From positions 124,001 through 188,000 of the IMG/VR virus record IMGVR_UViG_3300028536_000014: a DNA stretch of 64,000 bases, one strand, 5' to 3'. The notes beneath the pieces were generated by a model. The model was given only the letters and a program-made list of their open reading frames with translations. It was not told the origin of the DNA and made no database searches. This document shows, in pieces, positions 6,303 to 54,244 of this stretch (its first letter is position 1; each line of letters opens with the position of its first letter). The translations under genes and the position numbers were made by a program.

Positions 6303-6629
6303 ATGTCGACCAAACCTTATGTGATTTCCCGTAGAAATGCTCCTGGGAAATATTTAGTAATCAATATTTCTAAGTTCGTTGTTGTTCCAACAACGATCGA
6401 AGAACTTATCGATAAACTAGTTCAGCATCCTGAAGCGGTTGAATTTGATTGTGGTATTGGACAACAAAATGAAGCCTTTGTTATAAAGCTTAAGGACATT
6501 CATTCTCGAGCTGCTTTAATGGGCTACGCAATCAGTGCTAAGGAAGATGAGCCTGGTTATGCACAACAAGTTAAGGAATTGGCTGAACGTTCTGGTATTT
6601 ATAGCCGTTATTGTAAGACGCCTGATTAA
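6303..6629 (+). CDS. hypothetical protein translationally coupled to terminase
   Basis: 108 aa; TAATG overlap with the terminase start. Confidence 0.75.
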   Translation: MSTKPYVISRRNAPGKYLVINISKFVVVPTTIEELIDKLVQHPEAVEFDCGIGQQNEAFVIKLKDIHSRAALMGYAISAKEDEPGYAQQVKELAERSGIYSRYCKTPD

Positions 6630-9196
6630 TGTTACTTTTTGAAAAAGATTGGAATGAACTTTATCCAACAGCGATAGTTCATTACGATTGTCCGAACAAA
6701 AGCTTTCTTCATTATGCCCAGTTACTTAAAGCGATGGGTATAAAGAACTGGGCATGGTGTCTTGCTTTAATTCATTCGGAATTAAGACATGTCGATCCGT
6801 TTAATCCAAATCTTACGTTGGATCAACAACTTCTGATTACTCTGGAGTGCAAACTAAATCCTTGGTATTATTTTCGCTCTGTAGCAAGAGCTATTGGAAG
6901 TACGTCAGATACACCTATTTATTTTAACGCTAATCGTTCTAACATGGCGTTGTATTGGTTATTTTTTAATCACATTACAGTTTGTTTACTTCAACCAAGA
7001 CAGACGGGTAAAACATTTGGTTCAACATCTTTAGATACTTATCTTTTAAATATCGCAAGTACGGGTGGTCGAACACTACTTCTAACTAAAGATGAACAAC
7101 TTAGAGCTAAGACATTAAGTGAAATTAAAACGATTGAAGAATTATTACCGTTTTATCTTCGTCAACATAATAAACACGACATAGGAAATCGTGAAGAAAT
7201 AAATGTTTCTTCATTAGACAACAATTATAAAGCGTTAATTGCTAGAAACGATCCTATTGCAGCAGATAAAACAGGTAAAGGTCATACTGTAGAAAACGTT
7301 CGAGTTGATGAATTCGCATTCCTGTTTTATATTAGCATTGCTTTATCGTCATTACTACCTGTAACAACAGCTGCACGTAAGACCGCTGAAATAGTAGGTA
7401 AACCCTACGGTAATATTTTCATGACAACGGCTGGTAAAAAAGACGATAGAGATGGCGCTTTTGCTTTTAATTATTTCAATTCTGGTGCGCCGTGGACAGA
7501 GTTTCTATTTGATTGTGCGAACATAGAAGAACTTAGAAATGTTATTAAAAGTTCATCTAGAGATGGTAATATTCATCGTGTTCATTGTGTTTTTAATCAC
7601 CGTCAATTAGGATATACTGATGAATGGCTTCGAAATGTTGCTGCTGAGAATAGCTCTTACGGAGAAGCATTCGAACGTGATTATCTTAATATCTGGACAT
7701 CAGGTAGTCAAAATAGTCCGTTGACTGTTGAGGAATCAAAGAAGGTTAGAGATTCTCAAACAGAAATTAAATACGCTGAGATATCTAAATACGGTCAAAT
7801 CGTTCTTCGTTGGTATATCAGAGAAGAAGAAATTAAACGTGTAATGTTAAACGAATATACCGTGGCTGCAGTAGATACAAGTGACGGTATGGGTAAGGAC
7901 GAGATCGCACTGAATATTCGTCACCTTAAGACAGGTGAAATTCTTGCAGTTTGTGGGATTAATGAAATCAATCTCATTACCGTTTCGAATTTCTTTGTTG
8001 AACTTCTAAAGATTTATCCTAAATTAACAATGATTATTGAGCGTCGTAATCAAGCAGCTAGTATTGTTGATTACATGCATAAACAACTAATTGCTGTTGG
8101 GATAGATCCATTTAGACGACTCTTCAATATGGTTGTTCAGGAGCATATGGAATATCCTGAACGTTATGCCGAAATACAAGAACGAAGAAATATCGGTAAT
8201 GAGAATTTCCTTGCTCAGTATAAAAAATATTTTGGGTTCACGACATCAGGAGGAGGTACTACTTCTCGTTCTGAACTCTACGGAACAACATTTCGTGCAG
8301 CAGTGAAATATACAGGCGATCTAATTAAAGATAAACCCACTATCGATCAGCTTCTTGCACTTATTATTAAGAATGGACGAGTAGATCATCCAACAGGTGG
8401 TCATGATGATCTTTGTTTCGTTGGTTCTACCCTAGTAAGAACTATAAAGGGTAATATACCGATTTCTGAATTAAAGATAGGAGATCTAGTATTAACTAGA
8501 GAAGGTTACAAACCTATACTCTACATTTATAATAGAGAAAAAGAAGTTATTAGTAAGTTTGGTTTAACAGGAACAGCCAACCATCCTTTCATTACCCCAA
8601 ACGGAGAAATACCGTTTGAAGATCTTACATTAGAGAGTGTTGTGTACACATGGCACGAGAATCTATCGAGTATAGCGGAAAAACGTATCATAGATATCTT
8701 GAATCATAAAGACTACACATCCAAAGATATTACTCAAGAAATAAAGCTGATGAAGTCAGAAGGAAGAAAAGAGAAAGTTTACAATCTATTAGTGGCTGAT
8801 TGTCATGAATATTTTGTTAATGATATTCTAGTTCATAACTGCGTTTCATGGTTATTGAGTTATTGGTTCATGTCTCAAGGAAAAAATCTCCAGTATTATG
8901 GAATTCCTTCTAACTATGTTTTGTCTCAAAATCAAGTTATTCATTCTCATGCTAATAGAGAAGAGATGTATCAGCTTGAACTTTCTCGTCGTGCAAAAGA
9001 ACACATCGAAAAACTTATAGAAGCTATTCGTAAAGAGCGAGATCCTAATGTATCTGAACGTCTTGTGTATGAAATAGAAAGTGTTAAAAGACTTTTAGGT
9101 GATCAACATGAGGTATCGCTATCAGTCGATGCAATGTTAAGTGAAATCAAGAAACAAAAGATACTAAAGTATTCGGTAAAACGATCACTCTATTGA
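6629..9196 (+). CDS. terL: terminase large subunit (phiKZ gp25-like), intein-containing
   Basis: Walker A QPRQTGKT, Walker B VRVDE, TTAG coupling motif, nuclease VDTSD/IIERR/HDD; 713 aa after intein removal. Confidence 0.93.
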   Translation: MLLFEKDWNELYPTAIVHYDCPNKSFLHYAQLLKAMGIKNWAWCLALIHSELRHVDPFNPNLTLDQQLLITLECKLNPWYYFRSVARAIGSTSDTPIYFNANRSNMALYWLFFNHITVCLLQPRQTGKTFGSTSLDTYLLNIASTGGRTLLLTKDEQLRAKTLSEIKTIEELLPFYLRQHNKHDIGNREEINVSSLDNNYKALIARNDPIAADKTGKGHTVENVRVDEFAFLFYISIALSSLLPVTTAARKTAEIVGKPYGNIFMTTAGKKDDRDGAFAFNYFNSGAPWTEFLFDCANIEELRNVIKSSSRDGNIHRVHCVFNHRQLGYTDEWLRNVAAENSSYGEAFERDYLNIWTSGSQNSPLTVEESKKVRDSQTEIKYAEISKYGQIVLRWYIREEEIKRVMLNEYTVAAVDTSDGMGKDEIALNIRHLKTGEILAVCGINEINLITVSNFFVELLKIYPKLTMIIERRNQAASIVDYMHKQLIAVGIDPFRRLFNMVVQEHMEYPERYAEIQERRNIGNENFLAQYKKYFGFTTSGGGTTSRSELYGTTFRAAVKYTGDLIKDKPTIDQLLALIIKNGRVDHPTGGHDDLCFVGSTLVRTIKGNIPISELKIGDLVLTREGYKPILYIYNREKEVISKFGLTGTANHPFITPNGEIPFEDLTLESVVYTWHENLSSIAEKRIIDILNHKDYTSKDITQEIKLMKSEGRKEKVYNLLVADCHEYFVNDILVHNCVSWLLSYWFMSQGKNLQYYGIPSNYVLSQNQVIHSHANREEMYQLELSRRAKEHIEKLIEAIRKERDPNVSERLVYEIESVKRLLGDQHEVSLSVDAMLSEIKKQKILKYSVKRSLY
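8414..8839 (+). mobile_element. mini-intein (142 aa) in terminase
   Basis: HDDL|CFVGSTLV...TANHPF...VYNLLVADCHEYFVNDILVHN|C: blocks A, B, F and G, with +1 Cys. Confidence 0.95.
8650..8799 (+). pseudogene. possible decayed out-of-frame endonuclease remnant inside the intein
   Basis: Alternative frame reads MARESIEYSGKTYHRYLES*RLHIQRYYSRNKADEVRRKKRESLQSISG*. Confidence 0.45.
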
Positions 9197-9204
9197 ACAA
9201 CAAA

Positions 9205-9236
9205 GATAACCAGTACCTTATCAGGTACTGGTTATC
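9205..9236. terminator. hairpin between convergent genes
   Basis: 14-bp stem GATAACCAGTACCT, loop TATC. Confidence 0.7.
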
Positions 9237-9511
9237 GATGTCTTTATTCTTTTTTTGAACAAACTCTTCTTGAAAAACATCAATATGATTAGTAAAATAA
9301 ACACAAGTGGGTAGACAAACATTAACTCACTTCGAACATAGTAAACTTTACTTAATTGATCTTTTGTAAAGCCACAACTTTTTAAAGTATACCAAGCAAA
9401 AAGAAAGTTGGGTTTGTACAACATGTAACCAATCGCAAGATATAAAAAGGTATAGGCAATTCCTTTTGCGTAGAACATTTCGATACAAAGATAGTGATTT
9501 TCTATTTTCAT
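9221..9511 (-). CDS. small membrane protein
   Basis: Start reassigned to ATG 9511 (AAGGA SD) because the track's 5' extension overlaps the 9606-9857 gene; two hydrophobic segments. Confidence 0.5.
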   Translation of the reverse strand: MKIENHYLCIEMFYAKGIAYTFLYLAIGYMLYKPNFLFAWYTLKSCGFTKDQLSKVYYVRSELMFVYPLVFILLIILMFFKKSLFKKRIKTSITST

Positions 9512-13786: not shown

Positions 13787-14776
13787 TTAAGCAAGACCTT
13801 CGACTGCCAGAGTCGAATGTGTACTCGTGATGTTATAGTCAGATAGAATCTTGTGATACTGCTTGACATAGTCGTCAGCAATTCCTCGTTTACCGACACG
13901 TTCTGCAATTTTATAGATAAGACTCTGACGATAACTACGTTCTTCTAAGGCCGCATGGATGATAGCCATCCAAGTAGGAGGGTGTTCGGTTGCAACCGCA
14001 ATGATATCTTTGCTGTTGGTACCATACCAACTATTCTTCAGAAGTGTTAAAAGTGTTAAAACATTCAAGTCTTTCAAACGAATGTTATCTGTCGTAGCTT
14101 TAACACCCTCGACAAATGTATCAACACCTTTCATCATCGGCATCTTCTCAAAGACTTTATTAACAGTCTTGGCATCAGCTGCAGTGACTTTGCTGGTGTG
14201 AATCTGCCATTTCTGTAATGTTTCTTCATCGTAATCGGTTTCGTCTGTGAAGAGCGATTGATAATAGTAGGATGCTGTGATAGCAATGATTAACTGATCC
14301 ATTGGGTTCAACGCATAAGCTCTAGCCAAAATATCAGCCATCCAACGACCAAACATCATCGTTGAGAAATACAAATTGATTTTCAATGCTTCTACATCTC
14401 CTTCTAACCACTCTATGTTAAGAATGGCGCGAGAACGTGCAAAGTTATATTCAACCTGACTACTGATCGCTGCTGACAATGATGTCAATGTACCGTCAAA
14501 GATCCTTTTCCTCAAATATAAACGCATATCCGTTACCATTAACCGATTTCCATCTCGGGTCCTATAAGCATACGGATGAGCAAATAAGGGGATCTTTTCT
14601 TCAGAATCTTGTAGTGATGTGATAAAAACTGGATATATCGGACCCAGTTTTTTTACATCCAATGAGGACGTCAACAAATTGTCCCGAATCAAGGACTCAC
14701 TTATTGCTTCGGAAAGCCGTGTTGTATTAAACCTGGATCCGAGAGTCGTTTGATACCCATCAGTGAATTTTGACAT
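13787..14776 (-). CDS. virion structural protein (phiKZ gp28-like)
   Basis: IPLFAHP, TDMR, SWYG and VATEHPPTW motifs; divergent from the sheath gene. Confidence 0.75.
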   Translation of the reverse strand: MSKFTDGYQTTLGSRFNTTRLSEAISESLIRDNLLTSSLDVKKLGPIYPVFITSLQDSEEKIPLFAHPYAYRTRDGNRLMVTDMRLYLRKRIFDGTLTSLSAAISSQVEYNFARSRAILNIEWLEGDVEALKINLYFSTMMFGRWMADILARAYALNPMDQLIIAITASYYYQSLFTDETDYDEETLQKWQIHTSKVTAADAKTVNKVFEKMPMMKGVDTFVEGVKATTDNIRLKDLNVLTLLTLLKNSWYGTNSKDIIAVATEHPPTWMAIIHAALEERSYRQSLIYKIAERVGKRGIADDYVKQYHKILSDYNITSTHSTLAVEGLA

Positions 14777-14816
14777 TTCGTTTTATCCAAAAACAGTTTA
14801 AGGAAAGGTTAACCAT

Positions 14817-17348
14817 ATGACGCAGCAAACCATTGTCAATGGTGCAGGTATGACGATCAATCTGGGTACGGACGACCTTTCTAAGAAAGTCGTTCCTATT
14901 ACCCCAGAGCAGATACCACAGCATCTGCCCATGTTTTTCTTATTTGCTCAGAGGGGGAATGGTAAATTTCTCGTCGATGGCAATACGTCTCAACTGATCT
15001 TTGGTAGTTCAACGTTTGATCCGCGTAGCGACTACTTCAATCACGCCACATTGTTTGCCAACGAATCAATCGCACAAGCCAATAGCATTATGGTCAAGCG
15101 TTTGATTCCGACCGATGCTGGACCGATGTCTAACGTTGTCGTTTGGCTTGATGTACTGGTCACAATGGTCGATCTGTACCAGCGTAATCCGGATGGATCA
15201 ATCACGCTGGACTCGATGGGTGATCCAACAATTGTAGGATCGGCTCCTGGTCTGAAAGCCAAATTTGTCAAAACCTATCGTACGACAGTTGTCGAACAAG
15301 AAACGATTGGTGATAAGACAGAAGTCGTTGGTGATCAAACCGATGCTGGTACTGTTGGTACAGTAGCGGTTGCTCAGACAGCAGTTGGAACTACACTGGT
15401 TATGAATAGCGGTGTCGGTATTATTCCGACTCAAGCTGTGACTGGTACCGGTATCGCATCTAACACAACAGTGTCGGCAGTAGCTGGTACAGCCACTACC
15501 ACGACTGCTGCTAATGGTGCTGCATCTTCGGCACAAGCAGTCATTACAGTTGATGCTACTACCGGTCTTGCAGTGGGTATGGTGGTGCGTGATACCACAA
15601 CCAGTGGTGCCATTCCGGTTGGTGCAAAGATTCTATCCATTGGAACTGGCACCATTACACTGAATGTCAATCTAACATCTGGTATTCTGGATAACGATGT
15701 GATCGTTGCTTATCCGACTGTCACATTGTCTGCAGCCACTACTTCTGCTCTTTCGTCTAGTGCCTCTGTCAGTTTTGGTGCTAATGCTACTTCGACGCGC
15801 TATCCGCTCTTCGAATTGCAGAATAGCTATTATGGTGCTGATGGTAACAATACTGGTTTCCGTCTTTGGGCTCCGACAACAGCTGGTGGCAATAGCATGC
15901 CTACAGCCATGATGGCTCAATATAAGGTCTATCCGTATATGTTCTCTGTTATCGAACGTGCGGATGTTAATAGTAATCCTACGTATGACAAGACCATTTC
16001 GGGTGAAACCCAAGTCATGTTTACGTTTGCAGAAGGTGTGATCAATCCGACAACTGATCAGCAGATCGGTTGGGATCAGATCATTCTTCAATCTTACAAT
16101 ATGATCGATAATCCCGGTTATCCGGATGTGATTGGTCGTATCAGCAATATGTATGTCTACGAAGCTAATATCACAACGGTTACAAACCTGATGTGGGAAT
16201 TTGAATCAGTCTATATCGATTCCAACAGTGATATCACTTCGGATTCGACATCGGCTGGTCTGATGAACTTCGTGACGGGTGTGTCTTCTGATAACGTTCC
16301 ATATCAAACCTATCAGTTCGTGGATTCGAGCACTTCTGTTCGCATGTCTCAATATAGCAACGTTTTCCTGTCTGGTGGTGCTGATGGCACGATGGACAGT
16401 ACGATGTATGAAACGTTGGTGTCTGCTGAGATGGATAAGTATGCCGATCCAACAGATGAAGTTCAGGATATTGCGTATAATGTCGAATCGATTATCTACG
16501 ATTCTGGCTTCTCGCTTGATACTAAGTTCAAGCTGGCTGAATTCATTTCTGTTCGTAAAGATACTGTTTGCATTCTCGGCACACATACCGTTGGTGATGA
16601 TACACTAACTGAGTCCGAAGAGCATTCGGTTGCTGTTTCACTTCGTACCCGCCTGCAGATGTATCCGGAATCCGATTACTTCGGAACACCTGTTATGCGT
16701 GGTATGATCATGGGACGCAGTGGTCTTGTTCGCAATAGCGAATATACTCAACGTGTTCCGGCAACATTCGAGATTCTTAGCAAGTTTGCTAAATACATGG
16801 GTGCTGGTAATGGTAACTGGAAATCAGGATCTTCTCCGGAAGGTTCTCCCGGTAACAACATCACTCGGATGAAAGATATCAACATTACCTGGGTTTCTGA
16901 TACCGTTCGTAACTTGAATTGGGATACGGGTCTGAACTGGGTTCTGAGATTTGATCGTTCCAGGTATTTCATTCCGGCTTACAAAACCGTGTATGACGAT
17001 GATACCTCCGTGCTGAACAGCATCGTGGTAGCACTTGCGATTGCTCAGCTGAACAAGATCGCGAACTCGGTCTGGCGAACATTGACGGGCCGTACTGATC
17101 TGACTCCAGCACAACTTTGTGATCGTAGTAATGGTCTTGTTAACGATCGTGTCAAGGGTATCTTTGACAATCGTTATGTGATCATTCCTGCTGCAACGAT
17201 TAGCGATCTGGATAATCTGCGTGGCTTTAGCTGGTCGATGCCGATCAAGATCGGAGCCGATAACATGCGGACTGTGATGACGACTTGGGTTGAATCTTAT
17301 CGTCAAGCAGATCTTGTCCCCAACAACAATGCCCCGACGGGAGGTTAA
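14817..17348 (+). CDS. contractile tail sheath protein (phiKZ gp29-like) with a ~150-aa insertion
   Basis: PQHLP, YFNHAT, LSGGADG, IYDSGF, YPESDYFGTPVMR, KTVYDDDTSVLNS. Confidence 0.9.
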   Translation: MTQQTIVNGAGMTINLGTDDLSKKVVPITPEQIPQHLPMFFLFAQRGNGKFLVDGNTSQLIFGSSTFDPRSDYFNHATLFANESIAQANSIMVKRLIPTDAGPMSNVVVWLDVLVTMVDLYQRNPDGSITLDSMGDPTIVGSAPGLKAKFVKTYRTTVVEQETIGDKTEVVGDQTDAGTVGTVAVAQTAVGTTLVMNSGVGIIPTQAVTGTGIASNTTVSAVAGTATTTTAANGAASSAQAVITVDATTGLAVGMVVRDTTTSGAIPVGAKILSIGTGTITLNVNLTSGILDNDVIVAYPTVTLSAATTSALSSSASVSFGANATSTRYPLFELQNSYYGADGNNTGFRLWAPTTAGGNSMPTAMMAQYKVYPYMFSVIERADVNSNPTYDKTISGETQVMFTFAEGVINPTTDQQIGWDQIILQSYNMIDNPGYPDVIGRISNMYVYEANITTVTNLMWEFESVYIDSNSDITSDSTSAGLMNFVTGVSSDNVPYQTYQFVDSSTSVRMSQYSNVFLSGGADGTMDSTMYETLVSAEMDKYADPTDEVQDIAYNVESIIYDSGFSLDTKFKLAEFISVRKDTVCILGTHTVGDDTLTESEEHSVAVSLRTRLQMYPESDYFGTPVMRGMIMGRSGLVRNSEYTQRVPATFEILSKFAKYMGAGNGNWKSGSSPEGSPGNNITRMKDINITWVSDTVRNLNWDTGLNWVLRFDRSRYFIPAYKTVYDDDTSVLNSIVVALAIAQLNKIANSVWRTLTGRTDLTPAQLCDRSNGLVNDRVKGIFDNRYVIIPAATISDLDNLRGFSWSMPIKIGADNMRTVMTTWVESYRQADLVPNNNAPTGG

Positions 17349-17354
17349 TAGATC

Positions 17355-18230
17355 ATGGCTCGCTCAAGTGCTACATTACTGGGTTCACAAGCTTTTGGTG
17401 AACAACTTACACAATTTGCTACCGATCCCACTTATGGTGGTCAAGGCGGTTGGGCTAACGATCTGACACAATGGCTGAATAACCAGGCTTATGTCAGCAA
17501 ACAAGTCTTTGCGATTGTCATGGAAGCACCAGGTTTCTTCAACTTGATGTCTGATCCCAATAAGTGGGTCGAGATCCTACGTGCATTCTTCGAAACACAC
17601 GTTCGAACAATTGAAGGACTTCACTCGGGTGTCGAATATGAATTCGAAGAACATCCTGTTGGTGGTGCTGGTGAAGTTCAACATGAAGTTGTCAACGCTC
17701 GCCGTACTCCGTCTGCACCTGTCGTCAGTGTGATAGACAAGGTTGGTCTTCCGTTCCAGAACTTCTTCCGTAGCTGGGGTCAGTACGGTATGATGGATCC
17801 GGATACGAAATACGCGTTGGCTTCCAATCTGGACAATACGCCCAGTGAACCATGGACAGCTGATCAATATACGGCAACGGTTCTCTTTATTGAACCCGAT
17901 GCTTCTCACAACCGCGTGGTGAAGGCTTGGTTGTGTACAAACATGATGCCACATAGCAATGGTGAAGAAGATGGTCGTCGTGATATGACAGCTGCTGGTG
18001 AGCTTCTGACGTTATCGATCGAATTCACTGCATTGACTCAGACTGGAGTGGGTGTCCGTACTTTGGCGCAATCCATGCTGGACAATCTGAATCAGACTAA
18101 TGCCAATCCTTATCTGCGTGAATCGTTTATCTCTGATCAGGACAGTGATGTTGCTGTTGCGCAAGATGACTATGCCAACACTATGGCTGAAGTAGCGGAT
18201 ACTGCAGTAAGTCTCCCTGTAAATCCGTAA
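17355..18230 (+). CDS. tail tube protein (phiKZ gp30-like)
   Basis: Directly after the sheath; MMDPDTK, VLFIEPD and AWLCTNMMP motifs. Confidence 0.85.
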   Translation: MARSSATLLGSQAFGEQLTQFATDPTYGGQGGWANDLTQWLNNQAYVSKQVFAIVMEAPGFFNLMSDPNKWVEILRAFFETHVRTIEGLHSGVEYEFEEHPVGGAGEVQHEVVNARRTPSAPVVSVIDKVGLPFQNFFRSWGQYGMMDPDTKYALASNLDNTPSEPWTADQYTATVLFIEPDASHNRVVKAWLCTNMMPHSNGEEDGRRDMTAAGELLTLSIEFTALTQTGVGVRTLAQSMLDNLNQTNANPYLRESFISDQDSDVAVAQDDYANTMAEVADTAVSLPVNP

Positions 18231-42064: not shown

Positions 42065-45000
42065 ATGGCTAAACAAAAGAAGAGTCGTATTGATAATGGA
42101 GATTTCAGGTTTGATAGTGAACTTGACTTCAATTTTGATGGTGGTTTCGATACTTTCGATACTAAGAAAGCAAGTAAGAAACGCAAACCTGTTCATGATG
42201 TTATACGTGGTACTGCTGATGCTACAAAGAGCAAACTAAAGTCAGGATCTTTCTGGAACGACTTTGCCAAGAAGGCATTACCAAAGTCTTATAGCATTAT
42301 CACTGATGAACTTAAGAAGTCAAGTGAAATTCTTTCGGAAACATATCGAGAATCAGCTCGTCTCTTAAAACCCGACTTAGCTCGTATTGGTCGGCAAGTT
42401 GATTCATTGGTTCCTGAAGAATCTCGTCGAATCAAGAAATGGACCAATAAACTCAAATCGCATCAGGAACAGAATATTTCTGCATCTGCAGAAGCATTTC
42501 AAAATCAGGCTATTACTCAAGCTCAGACAGAAATCTTTGGTCGTATGCAAGATCATACCGATGCTAAGGAAGCTAGAGATCGTGCAGAACAGCGTGTCAA
42601 AGATAAGTTAGATGCCAAACGATTCTCTGCTAATGCAAATATTCTCGGTAATATTAACGAAGGTATTCAGAGATTGGCTTCGTATACAATGTCAGTGAAC
42701 TCTTCTTATCAGAAGAAATCATTAGAACTTCAGTATCGTTCTTATTTCGTTCAAGCTGAACTTTTAAAAACTACAACGAAATATAACGAACTCTTTAAAG
42801 CCTATTTTGAGGCCATCAAGGATAATACTGCACTTCCTGACTTTGTGAAGATTACAAAATCTGAACGTTTTAGAGAAATTGCTAGAACTAATATTTATTC
42901 AGGTATTCAGCAAGGTATCTCTGGAGGTTTTAAACGAGCAACAAAACGACTGGGTGGTTATGTTAGAGGAGCTGCTGGTCGTTTAGGTGATATAACAATG
43001 GGTCTGGACTCTGTTGATATGTTAAGAGACCAGATGAAAACTGCAAAAGAAATGGGCATAGACGAGTCTATGCTTTATCATAGTTCAAATGGAATAGGTG
43101 GTGCTCTAATAGATTTCATTGCAAGCAAAGCAGGTAAGAAATTAGGGCGCTTTTTTCCACAAGGTGGGTTTGTCTCTCGTAATCTAGCACGAGGTGCAAG
43201 GTTTGTTAAAAACCCAACCCAAGGAATTGATAAACTTCAAAAATCAAAAGGCTATCAGAAATTCATAAATCAGAAAGGACCTATGGGTGACTTTGCTCGT
43301 TTTATGAATATGTTTGTTAATGATTTTAAAACTCCTAAAGAAAATGCTAACTTAACCAAGGGTGGAGATTCTGCTGGACATATGACACCACACTTCTTCA
43401 GTCAAAAAGCTCATAAGTCTTTGACTGAAGTGATTCCTGGTTATTTGGCTCGTATTCTTCAAGAAACATCAGCGATCCGAATGGGCAGTCGTAATTTAGG
43501 ACAATTGCCTACTTATGATTGGAGACGGGGTAGGTTTACAACATCAAGTAAACTTCAATCAAAAATTCGTACTGGACTTCTTGGAGTATCTTCAACAGGA
43601 GCAATGGATTATAAACTGGACCAGGTTTCAAAAGCTTTTACTGGTAATGAATTAACAGGTGATCAATCTGTTCGTGTTAAACAGTTTATACACACGATCT
43701 CAGGCAATCCTGAAATGGATTATAACTCCAATAAAGTATTTCGGAGTAAAGCATTTCTAACACTTCCTCGTGAAGATCGTCGAATGATTATTACACAGAT
43801 GAAAAAGCATCGTGGTAGTCAAGAAGCCAAAAGTGTTATTACCAACGTAATGCGTGATGTTGGTGAAACACATAGTAATCAGATAGCTGCTGCTAAGAAT
43901 ATGATGCAACAGTTAATTCAAGAAGGTCATCAAGAAGAATTAATTCGTGCTAAATTAATTAGACCCAATAAACAAGGTGGGTATGATATTAATCTTCAGA
44001 AATATAATCAACTTATTCAGTCTCGTGGAATTACAGCTAAAGGTATTGCTCCTAAGAAAGCAAGTGGTTGGATTATTCCAACGAATGAGAAAGGCGAGCA
44101 TGAGAATATCGGAGATATAGAAGGTAAAATCTACGATACAAGTAAGAAACGTTATATGCATGATCCGAATTATACACCTGATCCGGACAAGAAACCGTTC
44201 ATGACGTTTTCTGATCGTAATGCTAAAACTAATATCGGTAAAAACCGTCGTCGTGGAGTGTTAAGTCGACTGGCTCGATTGGCAACTTATAAATATCGTT
44301 ACCGTGGTGGTAACGATAAGAATCAACACCAAGGATTTATGGCTCAGGAAGTCAATAAAACTTTTGGTGATAATGCTGCTCCTGGCGGGACTGCAGTTGA
44401 CATGAGTTATATGACATCGATGAATACTGAAGGTATACAGGAACTTCATCGTGATCAACAGAAACAGATGAAAGATCCAACATCGATCGATCTGTTACGA
44501 GACATTAGTAAACGTCTTGGTGAATTAGGAGCTATCAGTAAGGTTGGTATGGGTATTGAACCTACTGGTGATTCAAAGAGTTTATTTGGCGATACCGCTA
44601 ATCTTGCAAGTCGTTATATTCGTATTTTAGCAAGTAGAGGTGCAGCTGGAACTGGACGTGCTGGTCGTTTACTATTTGGAACTGCTGGTGCTATCGGTCG
44701 TCTTGTTCGTCGTCATGGTGGAGGATTACTCTCTAATGTCGGTGATCTTGCAGGAGAATATGGTCCGTCAGTAGCACATCAAGGCATATCTGGATTAGGT
44801 CGTGGTGGTCGATTCTTACTTGGAGCGACAGGCGGTCTTTTCGGTGCAGCTGGTGGTGTTGGACGTTTAACCAGAAGAGCACTTGGCCGTTATGCTAGAC
44901 CAGCAATATCAAGTACTGCTGGGTTTATAGGTAATCATCTCTTTGACGGTTTAGGTCGAATGGGGGATTTCTTAACGGGTAGTGCTAAATTAGGAGGGCG

Positions 45001-48000
45001 TGCTCTTGGTGGTTTAGGAGGCGGTCTTCGTTCCATATTAGGAGGGTTCGGTTCAGGTAAAACGAACAAAACTCTTGAAAAGATACTTGGAATATTGAAG
45101 AAATGGGATAAGCGAGGAATGGGTGGTGGTATGAGTGGAGCATCTCCCACAACAGCTGCCGCAGCTGCGATGGATAGTGACGATACATCATCAGTAGGAG
45201 GATCTGGACAAGGTTTTGCTGCTATGGGAGCAGTTAGTTCCGGACTTCGCGGACTGCGTAATATTATCGGTGGTCCTAAAGCACAAGCTCTATTTGGACG
45301 GTTTAAAGGTCTGAAAGGTATTAAACGTTTAGGTGGTTTAGGAGGCGGACGTCTAGGCCGTTGGGGTGGTGGATTGATGAGTGGGCTAGGTTCCTTATTT
45401 GGAGCTGGAGCGTCCGATGAATCTCACGACCCATCGGACCCACAACAAGCTGCTACCAAATCACCCGGACTATTTTCTCGTCTTATGAATTCCGTTAAAC
45501 GAGTCTCTACAGGTCCGGCCGCTGAACTTAATCCAGAGGGTGAAAAAGGACGTCGTGGAGGTGATTGGCGTACTCGTCTGGAAAATATGAAAGGTGGTTT
45601 AAATAATCAAGGTCCTGCTATTATTGCGGGTCCAAGATACCAAGAAAATACTGGAGGTGGTATCTTCGGTTTACTTAAAGGTTTTACCAGTTTCTTAACA
45701 GGTAACTTAGGCAGTATCTTCAGTTTCGCTAGAGGAACGTTAGGTAAACTAGGCGGGGTTGGTGGACGACTTGCAGGTATGTTGGGTAAAACTCGTCTAG
45801 GAGCTGCTGCTGGTAATTTACTTGGAAAAGTAGGAGCCCCTGTTCGTTCAGTATTAGGACGAGTAGGCGCTAGATTAGGTCTTAGTGCGGCTGCTGATGC
45901 GGTAGGTGCTACAGCTGCAGAAGGTGCTGTTGCAGCAGGTGCTGAAGCAGTTGTAGGAGCGGGTGTAGCCGAAGCAGGTATTGGAATCGTGGGTGCTGGT
46001 TTAACAGCCTTAGGTGCGATCTTTGCTTCTCCTTTTGTCCTCGGTGCCTTAGCTGTTGGTGTAGTTGCTTATGGAGGTTATAAACTCTTTAAGTATTTAA
46101 CTCGCGACAATCTTGACGAGTTCCAGAAATTCCGGTTTATGCAATACGGCTTTGGAACTTCATCAACGGAAAGCTATAATCATAAACTAGCAAATTTGGA
46201 AAACTATCTGTTAGATGGTAAAGTCGCTTATCAACCAGCGCCTGGTTCTACAGATAAAAAGGCTTATATCTTAGGTAAAAGTGTGGTTGCTGAAGAACTC
46301 TATAAAGTCTTTGATGTTGATCCTACTAATCGAGATCAAGTCTATCCATTCCAGATCTGGCTCAAAGGACGGTTCCTTCCGTTCTTCTTAAATACCATGA
46401 CTGCATTGTATAATACAAATCAGAAAGTCAAATTAGATAAATTAGATAAATTGACTCCGGATGAGAAACTTAAATTCTTGAAGGCAGCACAGTTCGATGG
46501 TGGTCCTTATAACCTTCTTGATAGTCCTGTTCCGACAGAAGTCATTTCTCTCTCTTCTAATAAAGAGGCGGTGAATAAACAAGTTGAATTCTTAATCGGC
46601 TCGGCTTCGTATGACAAAAAGAAACAACATGCACAAGCAACGAATTTAACTAAGCAAGATAAAGCCATTCTTGCTAACAAAATGGCTGCTGAAACAGCAG
46701 CACAAACTAAGAAAGTAACTCAAGACACGCTAAACGCAGCTAAAGACAAAGTCTATCAGACACGTTTAGATACCGTTACTCAAAACGGTAATCAGGTTTC
46801 CAATAATGGTAAACTACCTAGTGTTGTTAATACTGAAGCTGAAGGTTCAGTATTAGGTAAAGGTTCTGGTGGTACCGCTCTTGATCCTAGTGCTGTAGGT
46901 GGCACAAAGGGTGGTACGTCTAACCTAACATTGGCAGCAGGTGCTATCTTAGATGGCAATGGTGCAATGAAGTATATCAAACTGAAAGATCAGTCAGTGA
47001 CTTTCGATGGCGTCAATCCATCTGTTCTTAAGAACTTTATGGGAATGGTTCAAGAGTATGGTGATGCCACAGGTAATAGTGTTCAAGTCAATTCTGCTTA
47101 TCGTAGTCTTCAAGAACAGATTGCCGAATATCAAAAGAATCCAGGTAAAGCTGCAAGACCCGGTGGAAGCATGCATGGGTTTGGTTTAGCTTTAGATGTG
47201 AATTCTAAAGATGTCGATGCATTGGAAAAGATGGGTCTTATGCGCAAGTATGGATTTACTCGTCCAGTAGGAGGAGAAACTTGGCATATAGAACCAGCTG
47301 GTGTTCAAGAAAATATTGCATTAGCAAAATCAAATCCGAATATGGCAACTCAGATGACAGACGCTTCTTTACTTAAAGGTGGTGGTGGACTTGGCTCTAT
47401 AGCTGGTAGTCCTATGGGTAAACGAGATCGTGATCTTCAAGTTGCTATTTTGAATGCGGATTCACAACCAGCGAATAATACAACTGCAGGTTCTGCAGCA
47501 GGTAAGTTATCAAATTTAACAACACCCGCTACTGTTCCTACTGCTGCTAATGATAAGACGTACAATGCGTCTTCAGCAGTTGCTAAATTAGGAAATCAAA
47601 ACCTTGCTCCAATGACTAATACGACAGGTAATAAGTCATTGAACGTAGTCAAGAATAATCAATACACCATGGATGTTTCACCGAAAACTTCTTTCGATAC
47701 TGAGAAAGGTTCTCCCAGTACTCAAGCGGGTGGAATGGGAAGTGATAATGCTGATGGTAGTAACTTTACCATGGATCGTGATGGTATCTTAAAAGCCATT
47801 GATGTTAATGCTAAGAAAGCGGGTGTGGATGGTAAACATATGCAAGTAATTGCAGCAGTTGAATCAGGTCTTGATCCTCAAGCGCGTGCTTCTTCTACAG
47901 GAGCATCAGGATTATTCCAATTCGAAGCAAGTACTTGGAATGAATCCATGCGCAAGTATGGAAGTAAATACGGTTTATCAGGTAACGAGTCTCCTAGCAA

Positions 48001-51109: not shown

Positions 51110-52309
51110 TCAACAATTGAATTTAATACAACAGCTAGTTTGATTGGCCAACTGACGTAGATAACTAACCCCATTTGGATCATTCGCTATCATTGCTGCA
51201 ATAACACAATCTTCAGTTGTTCCAAAGGTGATAGTAAGATCACTTTCACTAAACGTATTATCAGCCACCATAGCAGATAATACTTCAGTAACATCAGACG
51301 AGACTGTTTGAATATGTTGAGTACTTGGAATTGCATCATAATCGCTAATATTCCAATTCGGATCTAACGCTATAATACTGTTGACTAATGCTGTACCTAA
51401 AGCTCCCATGTTTTGTTCAGTAGAACCTGGCGGTAATGTAAACTGCGCCATAGTGTCTGTGATGATAGAAGGAGCGAAACTAATAGGGCTGTTGTCTGTT
51501 GTAATTACAGCAGTAGCACCTATTGACATATCAATCACTGCAGTCGCATTGCCTTTCGTTGATTGTTCTGTCATGACGATACTGATAGCCCGTGCTAAAA
51601 CATCAGGTGTCATATTTGGCGTATTACTTAATGCTTTCATTACACCCGTCATATTAGCATCATATCCTAAATTACCTAGAATAACAGTTTGACGAAGTAG
51701 CGCATTGTTATCAACAGATGTATGTGGATAATTACTATTCGATACTTTATCTATAGCTTTAACTAAAGTATCGTAATCATAAATAGGATTACCTACTGAA
51801 ACGGGTTGTGAACATCCAGGAGGATTAGCAGCACCACTTGGAAGATGAACTGTAGGTCTATAGGGTTTACCTGTAGTAACATCTCCAAATAAATTCTTTC
51901 CATTATTAAGAACCCTCATATATCCTTGTACAACAGGATCATTCTTGAAGATTCCAGTTAATAAATTATTGATATCTTTAGATGAAAAACTATCGGTATT
52001 GAGAGTTGATTTTAAGATCCCTCTAACCTTACGAATAGCACTTTCAACTTTCAGAATCGTTGAAAGTGCTTTAGTTAATCCTAATGCTGATTCAACGCTA
52101 TTTTTTGTTTTAACAACATCACTTATTAATGTACCAGCACTCATAGTTCTCGACATACTACTAATCGAGCTCAGTATTGATTTCGTAATTGCAGCAACGC
52201 TATTTGATGCGCTATTTAAAATAACAGAGGGGTCACTCTGTTTGATTGACGTCATTGCGACGTTGAATTCTGTATCTAACGAATTAAATCGTACTGCCGG
52301 AATGGCCAT
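51110..52309 (-). CDS. hypothetical, probably virion-associated protein
   Basis: 399 aa; AGGAG SD; Ser/Thr/Asn-rich. Confidence 0.7.
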   Translation of the reverse strand: MAIPAVRFNSLDTEFNVAMTSIKQSDPSVILNSASNSVAAITKSILSSISSMSRTMSAGTLISDVVKTKNSVESALGLTKALSTILKVESAIRKVRGILKSTLNTDSFSSKDINNLLTGIFKNDPVVQGYMRVLNNGKNLFGDVTTGKPYRPTVHLPSGAANPPGCSQPVSVGNPIYDYDTLVKAIDKVSNSNYPHTSVDNNALLRQTVILGNLGYDANMTGVMKALSNTPNMTPDVLARAISIVMTEQSTKGNATAVIDMSIGATAVITTDNSPISFAPSIITDTMAQFTLPPGSTEQNMGALGTALVNSIIALDPNWNISDYDAIPSTQHIQTVSSDVTEVLSAMVADNTFSESDLTITFGTTEDCVIAAMIANDPNGVSYLRQLANQTSCCIKFNC

Positions 52310-52346
52310 TAAAATCTCCTATAACCATAGAATTCAATTAGAGACA

Positions 52347-52387
52347 TAAAAAAAAAAGAAGAGACCGGTGTTATCCGGTCTCTTCTT
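52347..52387 (-). terminator. intrinsic terminator
   Basis: 13-bp stem AAGAAGAGACCGG followed by a T-run and ATGTC on the minus strand. Confidence 0.8.
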
Positions 52388-52405
52388 ATAAACAACAGAG
52401 TGAAG

Positions 52406-54244
52406 TTATCCTTCGATCAATTCACTCTCATTGACTACTGATACTTCCGTTGACATCGTGGTTGTGCCACTATCTTCCTGGAAGTTGGTATCGACTTCAT
52501 CCTCATGGAGGAGACTGCTGTCCACGAGCGTTGCACCCGTGGTACCATCAACAACATCGACGAAGACGTTATCAGCACTACCTTCGACAAAGGTATTGCT
52601 ATCGACCAAAACACCTTCCGTCGATTTGTCAGAAACGCCCTCGGTCTGCTTGTCGACATTCAGAGCGTAGCTGTGATCATCGGCAGACAGCTGTTGGGTG
52701 GGTTCAGGAATGATCTGACCACGGAACAACGTGAATGTATAGCCCTTGATATCGTACACCGGGTTCGCATTCAGCTCTTCCTCGTCAAACATCACACGTT
52801 CCTTGTTATCGTCGTCGTGCGAACCTGTGCTGATACCAAAACACTTGACATTACCACTTAGGAACAACCCCGGCTGTTCATTCATCAGCATGATAAGGTT
52901 GAACGACACACCAAGCACAATGTACTTGTATTTGTCCGAATCCATCTGGTTACGAACAAGATCTTCTGCATCAACAACGAAAGGCGGCTTGACTCCGGTC
53001 TCGGTCAGAAGACTGTCGATCGGCTTGTACAACAGCACATCACGCTTCAGCTTAATGGTGTCACCACCTTCTGAATTTTCCATCACCACCTGTTTGTCAC
53101 CTTCCCGATCAATGTTCCGATCCATCAGCTTGAGCCACAGCGGAATGCTGTAGACTTCTATTTCACCGAGTACGCCTACCACAAACGTGTCCAACTTGAT
53201 CAGGTTGTTTGTTTCGAAGCCATCGACAAAGGTCCGTTCGATAATCGGTGCTGCACGAATGACGTCATCACTTGTGATCAGACCCGCACGAAAAAGTTCC
53301 TGATGATCGCTGATCTGCAATAGCGGAAGACTGACGTCGGCGACGACCGGACCAGTCTGAACCGCGATATCGTTGATCTTGACCGTACGACGGAACTGTT
53401 TGAGGAACAGAATGTCGGTCGATTCGTTGATGCTGGGAACGAGGATCGTGTACTTCTGATCAGGCTTGAAGATGAAGATATCACGATCGCGCTTCGATGT
53501 CTTCGGAGTTTTCGATTCGTGAACCGGCTTCGACGTCGTTGGCTTCTTGCTTTCTTCACGAGTCTGCAGACGCCGCTTGGTGGATTCCGGAATCACCGGA
53601 CGAATGGTTTCGTAGATGTCGGTCGGAGGATTGTTCGGATCATCGCACAGGAAACTGAAGTTCGGTTCCCTGCCTTCCTGAATGGCCTTCTGGATCTCCA
53701 TGTAACCATTCACAACCCAATCGTGATGCGCCGGACGAATCCGAACGCCCGTTTCGCCAGCACGATACATGTCGAACGGAAGTTCGTTCTCGTACATCTG
53801 CTGATTCAATTGCGTGCTGCAACGGATACGCTGATAAGCCGCATCCATGACGATCGCTTTGAGATGGGGAATCTTGCGCTGAGTCAACTGCTTGGTGAGA
53901 CTCTGCAGTTCACGACCTACCGCAAAACGCAGACGATCCGAACGTTCTTCAGAACGGATGTAAGCCCAGAAGCCGCTGATCGTTGCGAAGTTCAGGAAGA
54001 TGGGATGTTTGAAGTTCAACCGGTAGCTGAAGTCGAGCATTTTGCCGAGATTGGTCTCTGCGTAAAAGTCGATGTTGATGTGATCTTCACCATCACCCTT
54101 CCAGCTGTCAGCAGCTTTCCATACGCCTGTCTTCCCGTTGGTCTTGCGGACGACGAGATTATTGTTCCTCAGAGCGCCTGAAACGGCATCACCCATCGCG
54201 CTGTTGTGCTGACGGTCATAATTCTTGTTGTACTTCTTGGACAT
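52406..54244 (-). CDS. conserved jumbo-phage protein with a possible divergent NADAR-like N-terminal domain
   Basis: DGEDHINI...LGKML...F.HP..F.T..GFW; markedly GC-richer; acidic tail. Confidence 0.7.
   Translation of the reverse strand: MSKKYNKNYDRQHNSAMGDAVSGALRNNNLVVRKTNGKTGVWKAADSWKGDGEDHINIDFYAETNLGKMLDFSYRLNFKHPIFLNFATISGFWAYIRSEERSDRLRFAVGRELQSLTKQLTQRKIPHLKAIVMDAAYQRIRCSTQLNQQMYENELPFDMYRAGETGVRIRPAHHDWVVNGYMEIQKAIQEGREPNFSFLCDDPNNPPTDIYETIRPVIPESTKRRLQTREESKKPTTSKPVHESKTPKTSKRDRDIFIFKPDQKYTILVPSINESTDILFLKQFRRTVKINDIAVQTGPVVADVSLPLLQISDHQELFRAGLITSDDVIRAAPIIERTFVDGFETNNLIKLDTFVVGVLGEIEVYSIPLWLKLMDRNIDREGDKQVVMENSEGGDTIKLKRDVLLYKPIDSLLTETGVKPPFVVDAEDLVRNQMDSDKYKYIVLGVSFNLIMLMNEQPGLFLSGNVKCFGISTGSHDDDNKERVMFDEEELNANPVYDIKGYTFTLFRGQIIPEPTQQLSADDHSYALNVDKQTEGVSDKSTEGVLVDSNTFVEGSADNVFVDVVDGTTGATLVDSSLLHEDEVDTNFQEDSGTTTMSTEVSVVNESELIEG

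What the first reader, a model, noticed from the sequence alone, without database searches (positions are those of the whole stretch)
8650..8799. Remnant of an overprinted, out-of-frame endonuclease inside the terminase mini-intein
Seen: just after intein block B an ATG in another frame gives MARESIEYSGKTYHRYLES*RLHIQRYYSR...RRKKRESLQSISG*, with one internal TAA (8707) and a stop overlapping block F. The intein frame across this stretch looks like filler sequence. Recalled: some phage inteins encode an HNH endonuclease in an alternative frame, and such proteins often begin like 'I.(Y/F).G..(Y/F).RYP.S..R.YY'. Inference: an internal deletion removed the nuclease core and fused its two ends, capturing the step from overprinted homing element to mini-intein.
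Basis: partly seen in the sequence, partly recalled or inferred. Interest (0 to 1): 0.68.

Follow-up and report, generated by a model that had tools for sequence, protein, structure and literature searches.

The report
Endonuclease relic inside terminase mini-intein
A jumbo-phage terminase gene carries a small self-splicing intein that still holds, in a shifted reading frame, the two broken ends of a homing-endonuclease gene that survives intact in related phages: a real fossil of how such selfish elements decay, though the kind of element was first described in 2025-26.

Summary

**The feature.** Window 6629-9196 (+) encodes the large terminase of a phiKZ-like jumbo phage. It is interrupted at 8414-8839 by a 142-residue class-1 mini-intein. 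Two bases out of frame, an ATG at 8650 opens a reading that stops at TAA 8707 and ends at TGA 8797.

**Relatives.**
- Twenty-six related terminases carry a homologous intein at the same site: 6 mini (128-144 aa, 7 with the window's own) and 20 long (205-339 aa).
- Wherever I had DNA of a long allele, the same +2 frame holds an HNH_3, I-HmuI-like endonuclease ORF, intact in all but one allele. This covers 43 IMG/VR loci plus L002, L074 and L076, and three cultured phages.
- Across that overlap the intein frame stays open but its amino acids are no more conserved than those of an unused frame.

**The match.** The window's off-frame reading matches HNH codons 1 to about 35 (profile E 1e-5, the only hit in all six frames of 64 kb). 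It also matches a free-standing HNH gene (E 7e-8). About 360 bp holding the catalytic core are missing.

**Recurrence.** Other mini alleles have different junctions. One is a clean 366-bp deletion between CCTGAG repeats.

**Correction.** The first 20 or so relic codons overlie a structured part of the intein, not filler.

**Novelty.** New member of a known kind.

The parts
6629..9196 (+). Terminase large subunit precursor ORF (855 aa including the intein)
   Evidence: ORF list. PHROG terminase large subunit, E 1e-42. tblastn gives about 37% identity to phiKZ-like TerL, with the intein region unmatched.
8414..8839 (+). Mini-intein, 142 aa. It has Cys1, block B T-x-x-H, block F, a terminal His-Asn, and is followed by Cys+1 at 8840-8842.
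   Evidence: Translation. Pfam Hint_2 and PT-HINT above cut-off. AlphaFold model has mean pLDDT 90. Foldseek best match is the gp41-1 intein, E 2.6e-9. Intein-less relatives align straight across this insertion.
8650..8709 (+). Relic, first piece: start codon plus HNH codons 1-19, ending in TAA (8707-8709). It is in the +2 frame and overlies intein residues 80-99, which are structured.
   Evidence: Translation. Profile hit starts at profile position 1. 54% identity over 28 residues to free-standing HNH P0146. The intein model shows strand 86-91 and helix 92-98 with pLDDT 81-92.
8710..8757 (+). Relic, second piece: HNH codons about 21-35, upstream of the catalytic core, including the family's conserved R-x-Y-Y/F motif. 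In the intein frame this stretch is linker.
   Evidence: The profile match extends to 8754-8763 and 8757. In long alleles the HNH frame is 0.60 identical here, against 0.33 for the intein frame.
8733..8757 (.). Zone containing the deletion junction. About 360 bp (120 codons) are missing relative to the closest long allele: the whole HNH core and the helical DNA-binding tail.
   Evidence: Pairwise DNA alignment: window 8414-8732 is collinear with L002 3867-4185, and 8743-8839 with L002 4556-4652. Intein lengths are 142 and 262 aa. The exact base cannot be fixed at 74-76% identity.
8758..8799 (+). Relic, last piece: the basic C-terminal tail of the HNH ORF and its TGA stop (8797-8799) inside block F.
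   Evidence: Same tail and same stop position as in the long alleles L074 and L004. This is not independent evidence, because the intein frame is conserved here.
8714..8767 (+). Intein-frame linker (residues 101-118): the only true filler, made of HNH-derived DNA read in the wrong frame.
   Evidence: pLDDT is 53-68 here against 92-98 elsewhere. This part of the intein alignment is not conserved.

Best explanation
The stretch is a dead remnant of a homing-endonuclease gene that was once overprinted on the terminase intein.

In the ancestral long form, one piece of DNA was read in two frames.
- The terminase frame ran open through 120-200 codons of unconserved loop. This kept the precursor translatable, so the intein could splice and release functional terminase.
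- The +2 frame, starting from an internal ATG just after block B, encoded an I-HmuI-like HNH_3 endonuclease. By inference, this enzyme cuts intein-free terminase alleles of co-infecting phages, and repair then copies the intein in.

In the lineage of this phage, an in-frame deletion of about 360 bp removed HNH codons from about 36 to about 150. That took out the catalytic core and the helical DNA-binding tail. What remains is the start codon, about 35 N-terminal codons and about 13 C-terminal codons. A TAA has since arisen at codon 20. The purine-rich AGG stretch that sits 7 nt upstream of the ATG in four long alleles has changed here.

The relic has no function of its own. It survives because its first 20 codons double as a strand and helix of the intein, and the rest serves as the loop that joins the two halves of the splicing domain.

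Shown: homology, frame-specific conservation, the missing core, and recurrent deletions. Inferred: that the HNH is translated and active, that homing occurs, and that this mini-intein splices.
For: Same site and homologous inteins:
- All 26 intein-bearing relatives have the insertion at one alignment position. Six are mini (128-144 aa) and 20 are long (205-339 aa).

Intact overprinted HNH in relatives:
- The closest long allele, L002 (80% identical splicing domain), has a 164-aa +2-frame ORF that matches Pfam HNH_3 at E 5e-13.
- Forty-three IMG/VR loci with long inteins hold a homologue in the same relative frame. The mini alleles hold none.
- A profile of these ORFs hits I-HmuI in the PDB at E 7.8e-5. 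The AlphaFold model has pLDDT 93.

Which frame is selected:
- Over 114 ungapped codons, amino-acid identity is 0.53 in the HNH frame, 0.32 in the intein frame and 0.31 in the unused frame. Nucleotide differences peak at HNH codon position 3.
- Over 6683 overlapped codons in 35 non-redundant alleles, there are 0 stops in the HNH frame, 0 in the intein frame and 761 in the third frame.

The relic itself:
- The profile hit at 8650-8754 is the only one in the window.
- It matches the free-standing HNH P0146 at E 7e-8.

Deletion as the mechanism:
- L073 and L074 terminase genes are 97.7% identical. They differ by a 366-bp deletion flanked by an 8-nt imperfect direct repeat (CCTGAG exact).
- The mini alleles are scattered on the extein and intein trees, needing 6-7 changes for 7 minis.
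- L005 shows an earlier decay stage: a full-length intein with a stop codon in the HNH ORF.
Against: - No experiment shows that any of these HNH ORFs is translated or cuts DNA.
- Shine-Dalgarno-like signals upstream of the internal ATG are heterogeneous and only modestly enriched.
- Short-fragment family scans of the 49-residue relic alone found nothing.
- The trees are unrooted, so polarity (loss rather than gain) rests on the relic's content and on the near-identical L073/L074 pair, not on the topology.
- The junction cannot be placed to the base.
- The similarity of the 3' end is forced by the conserved intein frame.
Confidence: 0.9

Rival explanations
1. Chance open frame. An AT-rich gene throws up short off-frame ORFs, and the resemblance to HNH termini is coincidental.
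For: Off-frame openness of this size is common in the same gene. The relic alone hits nothing in Pfam or PHROGs.
Against: The profile gives a single significant hit in six frames of 64 kb, starting exactly at the ATG. The relic matches a free-standing HNH at E 7e-8. The DNA is collinear with long alleles on both sides of the gap.
Confidence: 0.01
2. The mini-intein is the ancestral, never-invaded state. Under this reading the long alleles arose when a free-standing HNH gene inserted into its loop, and the off-frame resemblance in the window is only the pre-existing intein sequence onto which the HNH start was later overprinted.
For: The 2025 and 2026 preprints propose that out-of-frame nucleases entered mini-inteins secondarily. 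A free-standing HNH of this family lies next to a terminase gene in L078. Relic codons 1-20 overlie a conserved, structured intein segment.
Against: The free-standing HNH already has the same N-terminal signature, so that signature was not created by overprinting on the intein. The window also keeps HNH codons 21-35 inside its unconserved linker. Mini alleles have different junctions and are nested among long ones. The L073/L074 pair shows deletion directly. Independent gains in the same frame at the same point would have to be assumed many times.
Confidence: 0.04
3. The remnant still makes a product with a role. Candidates are the 19-residue hairpin peptide, or a stop-readthrough fusion of the two ends acting as a DNA-binding or regulatory peptide.
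For: The ATG is retained. In L073 the fused remnant is still an open 47-codon ORF. The N-terminal hairpin is confidently modelled in the full protein.
Against: There is an in-frame TAA in the window. The upstream purine-rich motif present in four long alleles has changed. The remnant of the related mini allele L003 is riddled with stops. The ATG and first codons are explained by constraint from the intein frame.
Confidence: 0.03
4. Assembly artefact. A full-length intein was collapsed during metagenome assembly.
For: The genome comes from a single soil metagenome sample.
Against: A second assembler gives the identical sequence in one 62-kb contig at depth about 13 with no alternative joint. 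The gap keeps the terminase frame. The linker has diverged and acquired a stop. Six other mini alleles from other samples exist.
Confidence: 0.01

Closest known systems
[quoted passage not shown]
   Same: The nuclease is encoded on the same strand in reading frame 3 (offset +2) inside the intein. The in-frame reading is unstructured filler. Terminase large subunit is among the hosts. The ORF is missed by annotation. The authors predict decay to mini-inteins.
   Different: The nuclease family differs: HNH_3, I-HmuI-like here, against endonuclease VII-like there. tblastn with P0122 found no Mycobacterium, Gordonia or similar phage at E 1e-6. The hosts here are phiKZ-like jumbo phages and many uncultured phages. 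The preprint explicitly leaves relics of decay unsurveyed, and the window is such a relic.
[quoted passage not shown]
   Same: Full, mini and intein-free alleles are interspersed among close relatives. Frame-specific selection acts in the overlap. The nuclease has been lost and gained repeatedly.
   Different: That element is in a cellular replication gene, not a phage terminase. The nuclease type is not called HNH in that text. No end-remnants or deletion junctions are described in the passages I read.
ShiLan insertion: hidden out-of-frame HNH in a phage DNA methylase (Arsenault et al., Genes 2025, PMC11855218)
   Same: An HNH endonuclease is overprinted in another frame on an in-frame-open insertion in a phage gene.
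   Different: ShiLan has no splicing domain. Here the carrier is a bona fide HINT intein.
I-HmuI (PDB 1U3E) and I-TevIII-type HNH homing endonucleases of phage introns
   Same: These are the best solved-structure and sequence relatives of the intact alternative-frame proteins. They share an N-terminal beta-hairpin region, a beta-beta-alpha metal core and a separate DNA-binding tail.
   Different: Those enzymes are intron-encoded or free-standing and are read in their own frame. The window keeps only the hairpin region and the last few residues, with no catalytic core.
Natural mini-inteins such as gp41-1, Npu DnaB and Spl DnaX
   Same: About 130-145 residues, a HINT fold without a nuclease domain, and a short loop where the nuclease would sit.
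   Different: In this one, the loop can be read as the two ends of a nuclease gene in a different frame, which documents its origin.

Membership tests
Class 1 intein (HINT splicing domain) | Cys/Ser at position 1, block B T-x-x-H, terminal His-Asn, and Cys/Ser/Thr at +1 | tested here: met
   Cys1, T54-x-x-H57, H141-N142 and Cys+1 are read directly from the translation. All are invariant in the 27-sequence alignment.
Class 1 intein (HINT splicing domain) | HINT fold | tested here: met
   Pfam Hint_2 scores 35.7 bits against a cut-off of 28.4, and PT-HINT 30.6 against 27.7. The model has pLDDT 90. Foldseek finds 56 hits at E 0.001 or better; those listed are inteins and related Hint domains, and the best is gp41-1.
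Class 1 intein (HINT splicing domain) | Insertion in a conserved host-protein site, with intein-free homologues that align across it | tested here: met
   Relatives of about 710 aa lack exactly these residues. The site follows a conserved G-G-H-D-D motif. More distant inteins of the family sit at the D-H / D-A-x-R-Y motif of other terminases.
Class 1 intein (HINT splicing domain) | Protein splicing activity | not testable with these tools
   Inferred only, from intact catalytic residues and the fact that terminase is essential.
Mini-intein | No homing-endonuclease domain in any frame, and a length near the minimal HINT size | tested here: met
   142 aa. No HNH core is found in any frame of the intein. 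This is the only Hint domain in the genome.
HNH_3 / I-HmuI-like homing endonuclease (the relic as a gene) | Beta-beta-alpha metal catalytic core (H-H ... N ... N ... H) | tested here: not met
   The profile match covers positions 1-35 only. Pfam HNH_3 finds nothing in the relic. The core region, codons 40-84 of P0122, is absent.
HNH_3 / I-HmuI-like homing endonuclease (the relic as a gene) | Uninterrupted ORF | tested here: not met
   TAA at 8707-8709.
HNH_3 / I-HmuI-like homing endonuclease (the relic as a gene) | Homology of the retained part to family members outside inteins | tested here: met
   15 of 28 residues are identical to the free-standing P0146, E 7e-8. P0146 is a separate gene next to a terminase gene.
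[quoted passage not shown] | Intact nuclease ORF in another frame inside the intein, with the intein frame kept open | tested here: not met
   Not met by the window, which holds a remnant only. Met by its relatives L002, L004, L074, L076 and 40 or so further loci, and by the cultured phages TJE1 and Highwayman.

The most novel reading that the evidence does not exclude
The HNH cassette may be a selfish element in its own right that cycles in and out of a resident terminase intein. Under this reading, the two retained ends in mini alleles such as this one act as homology arms. These would let an intact cassette from a co-infecting phage be copied back in. The first 20 codons would be truly dual-coding, with both frames structured and both under selection. 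The family would then show nested homing (nuclease into intein, intein into terminase) rather than one-way decay. Three observations are compatible with cassette exchange but do not demonstrate it: DNA-binding tails (helical repeats versus zinc ribbons) are mixed among related inteins, free-standing copies sit beside terminase genes, and all three allele states occur in one narrow clade.
Probability: 0.15. Interest if true: 0.75.

Novelty: new member of a known kind. Interest (0 to 1): 0.55.

Why it matters
Inteins whose homing endonuclease is hidden in another reading frame were first reported in 2025-26. The authors noted that decay relics of such elements had still to be looked for.

This window supplies one. 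Its relatives supply the rest of the series:
- intact overprinted HNH;
- HNH with a single stop codon;
- a fresh clean deletion between short repeats;
- an older relic with a stop (this window);
- a scrambled relic;
- the empty site.

That series makes the decay half of the homing cycle directly readable for an overprinted element. It also shows the architecture is common. It occurs in most long terminase-site inteins retrieved here, in jumbo phages and small phages alike, and in at least three cultured phages whose records annotate only a terminase.

In practice, gene callers miss these nucleases, and long inteins of this kind risk being filed as decaying or as carrying unknown inserts. The cultured phages offer systems in which internal initiation, splicing with a 120-200 residue unstructured loop, and homing could be tested.

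Tried and rejected
- Pfam and PHROG scans of the 49-residue relic, with X at the stop, found nothing. The piece is too short and lacks the core. A family-specific profile was needed.
- A single-sequence pattern scan of IMG/VR with the whole terminase found nothing. The intein alignment worked.
- Shine-Dalgarno analysis was inconclusive. Mean duplex energy was -4.3 against -2.4 kcal/mol for background, and 29% against 10% of sites were at or below -6. Hosts are heterogeneous and my choice of start codon was mechanical. The AGG motif 7 nt upstream is seen in only four close long alleles.
- Foldseek of the HNH model against the PDB gave I-HmuI on top, but at E 0.12 (probability 0.98). The long helical tail lowers the score, so I rely on the profile hit instead.
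- The read search found one soil metagenome, probably the source. It is held only as contigs, with no second allele and no RNA, so it says nothing about expression or polymorphism.
- I looked for an intact nuclease of this family elsewhere in the genome that could mobilise the mini-intein in trans. There is only a distant free-standing HNH_3-like gene, below the Pfam cut-off.
- An alternative genetic code to read through the TAA was considered and rejected. The terminase and its neighbours read normally in table 11.
- The large representative-protein search, complex prediction and RNA tools were not needed.
Full report
**What is in the window**

The window is part of a 244,725-bp IMG/VR virus record with direct terminal repeats. 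ORF 6629-9196 (+) is its large terminase. PHROG terminase large subunit scores E 1e-42. It is about 37% identical to phiKZ-like jumbo-phage terminases, which match in two pieces and skip a middle part.

The skipped part, 8414-8839, is a 142-residue intein. It has Cys1, block B T-x-x-H, block F, a terminal His-Asn and Cys+1. Pfam Hint_2 and PT-HINT score above cut-off. The AlphaFold model has mean pLDDT 90, and its best fold match is the gp41-1 intein at E 2.6e-9.

An open stretch of this size is not unusual in this AT-rich gene, so the case rests on content.

**Relatives settle the question**

A word search with the terminase returned three kinds of relative:
- intein-free, about 710 aa;
- intein-bearing, 813-894 aa;
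- intein-bearing, 937-1088 aa.

All 26 intein-bearing relatives carry a homologous intein at one alignment position. Six are mini alleles of 128-144 aa and 20 are long alleles of 205-339 aa. In the long alleles, the extra in-frame sequence is poorly conserved and looks like filler.

The contig of the closest long allele is L002, whose splicing domain is 80% identical to the window's. Inside its intein, in the +2 frame, it has an intact 164-codon ORF at L002:4103-4597. That ORF matches Pfam HNH_3 at E 5e-13 and several PHROG HNH families. Its first 30 or so residues and its last dozen align with the window's off-frame reading.

**The architecture is widespread**

A scan of IMG/VR with the intein alignment gave 69 loci.
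- Forty-three loci with inteins of 239-346 aa have a homologue of that HNH in the same relative frame.
- The loci with inteins of 124-155 aa have none.

These inteins sit in the same nuclease-domain motif of very different terminases.

A profile of 34 such ORFs hits I-HmuI (1U3E) at E 7.8e-5. The model (pLDDT 93) shows N-terminal hairpins, a beta-beta-alpha core and three long helices. Foldseek puts I-HmuI first, but weakly.

Three cultured phages have the same arrangement under a plain terminase annotation: Tetrasphaera TJE1, Acinetobacter Highwayman and Clostridium phiCDHM19. For TJE1 and Highwayman I read the intact ORF directly.

**Which frame is under selection**

| Measure (long alleles) | HNH frame | Intein frame | Unused frame |
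|---|---|---|---|
| Mean pairwise amino-acid identity, 114 ungapped codons, 13 alleles | 0.53 | 0.32 | 0.31 |
| Stop codons, 6683 overlapped codons, 35 non-redundant alleles | 0 | 0 | 761 |

Nucleotide differences are highest at the third position of HNH codons. So the nuclease frame is conserved as protein, and the terminase frame is conserved only as an open frame. This is what splicing of an essential protein requires.

**The relic**

The HNH profile was scanned over all six frames of the 64-kb window with stops masked. It gives a single significant match, at 8650-8754, covering profile positions 1-34 (E 1.3e-5). It still matches when the five closest rows are left out of the profile (E 2.9e-4). 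The whole-genome scan agrees and reports the TAA.

This similarity could in principle be a by-product of the shared intein frame, so I looked for a member of the nuclease family outside any intein. P0146 is a separate gene lying just after a terminase gene in L078. The relic matches its N-terminus at 15 of 28 residues, E 7e-8. The N-terminal signature therefore belongs to the nuclease, and the window inherited it.

DNA alignment places the window's 8414-8732 against L002 3867-4185, and 8743-8839 against L002 4556-4652. The junction lies within 8733-8757, and about 360 bp are missing. The lost part is the whole catalytic core and the helical tail.

In the intein model only residues 101-118 (8714-8767) are of low confidence. 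Residues 76-98 form two strands and a short helix. These are encoded by the same bases as relic codons 1-20. In long alleles this segment is more conserved in the intein frame (0.45) than the rest of the overlap (0.32-0.33).

The start of the nuclease gene thus overlaps a working part of the splicing domain. This explains why it is the best-preserved piece of the relic.

The 3' piece overlies block F, so its similarity is forced. Its TGA is at the same place as the stop of the long alleles L074 and L004.

**Deletion is recurrent**

- L073 (mini) and L074 (long) terminase genes are 97.7% identical. They differ by a 366-bp gap flanked by an 8-nt imperfect direct repeat (CCTGAG exact), and the fused remnant is still an open 47-codon ORF.
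- L075 keeps about 22 N-terminal codons.
- L003 is scrambled.
- L005 is a full-length intein whose nuclease ORF has a stop after about 30 codons.
- On the extein tree the window sits in a small clade with a mini, a long and an intein-free allele. The seven minis need seven changes.
- On the splicing-domain tree they need six, and the window's nearest neighbour is the long allele of L002.

**What is not shown**

- Nothing here demonstrates translation or activity of the nuclease, homing, or splicing.
- Upstream ribosome-binding signals are uneven.
- The only sequencing run holding the window is the probable source and is kept as contigs. It confirms the sequence but shows no second allele and no RNA.
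- The genome holds no other Hint domain. Its only other HNH-like gene is a distant one.

**Comparison with the literature**

- Out-of-frame nucleases inside inteins were reported for actinophages: endonuclease VII-like, frame 3, terminase among the hosts. That report explicitly says relics of decay remain to be surveyed.
- They were also reported for the cyanobacterial dnaX intein, where full, mini and empty alleles coexist.
- An out-of-frame HNH without an intein is known from a phage methylase.

I found no paper describing this HNH_3-bearing terminase intein family or its relics. The library is not exhaustive. tblastn with the HNH found no SEA-PHAGES-type actinophage, so the nuclease family appears distinct from the one in the actinophage preprint.

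**Verdict**

The feature is a new member of a recently described kind. It is of moderate interest in itself, and more as the entry point to a large, mostly unannotated family.

Noticed in passing
L073:2301-2720 versus L074:2301-3086: Two terminase genes from different samples are 97.7% identical. They differ by a clean 366-bp deletion of the nuclease core, between an ATCCTGAG and an ACCCTGAG repeat. The fused remnant is still an open 47-codon ORF. This is the freshest example of the event inferred for the window.
   Followed up: yes
L005:2501-3286: A full-length (262 aa) intein whose alternative-frame HNH has an in-frame TAG after about 30 codons, while the terminase frame stays open. This looks like point-mutation decay before any deletion.
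   Followed up: partly
L081 (Tetrasphaera phage TJE1, HQ225832 13379-15565); L082 (Acinetobacter phage Highwayman, OZ038341); Clostridium phage phiCDHM19 gp2: Cultured phages whose terminase CDS contains an intein of this family with a +2-frame HNH match. The ORF was read as intact in TJE1 and Highwayman; for phiCDHM19 I have only the tblastn match. The TJE1 and Highwayman records annotate only the terminase there.
   Followed up: partly
L078:3001-3585: A free-standing HNH of the same family, with the same N-terminal signature, lies as a separate gene directly downstream of an intein-free terminase gene. It is a candidate source, or an escapee, of the overprinted cassette.
   Followed up: partly
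Alternative-frame ORFs of L002, L004, L074, L076, L077 versus L007-L016 and others (alignment A3): The DNA-binding tails differ. Some ORFs have tandem helical W-x-x-N-P-E/D repeats with variable copy number, which accounts for intein lengths of 258-339 aa. Others have Cys-rich zinc-ribbon-like modules. L077 combines a helical-repeat tail with an intein of the clade that otherwise has zinc ribbons, which hints at module exchange.
   Followed up: no
G000:C1 about 77.8-78.7 kb, minus strand (L080:1045-1908), outside the window: A 287-aa free-standing protein with a weak HNH_3 match (20.6 bits in the Pfam scan and 23.5 bits in the genome search, both below the 24.8 cut-off). It is only distantly related to the intein nuclease family.
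   Followed up: partly
window 9208-9257: Directly after the terminase stop codon there is a GC-rich inverted repeat followed by a run of T. It looks like an intrinsic terminator. The next genes, from about 9221, run on the opposite strand.
   Followed up: no
window 14001-18000, 44001-46000, 52001-54000: Islands of 44-47% G+C in a genome that is otherwise 34-40% G+C. No tRNA genes occur anywhere in the 64 kb.
   Followed up: no
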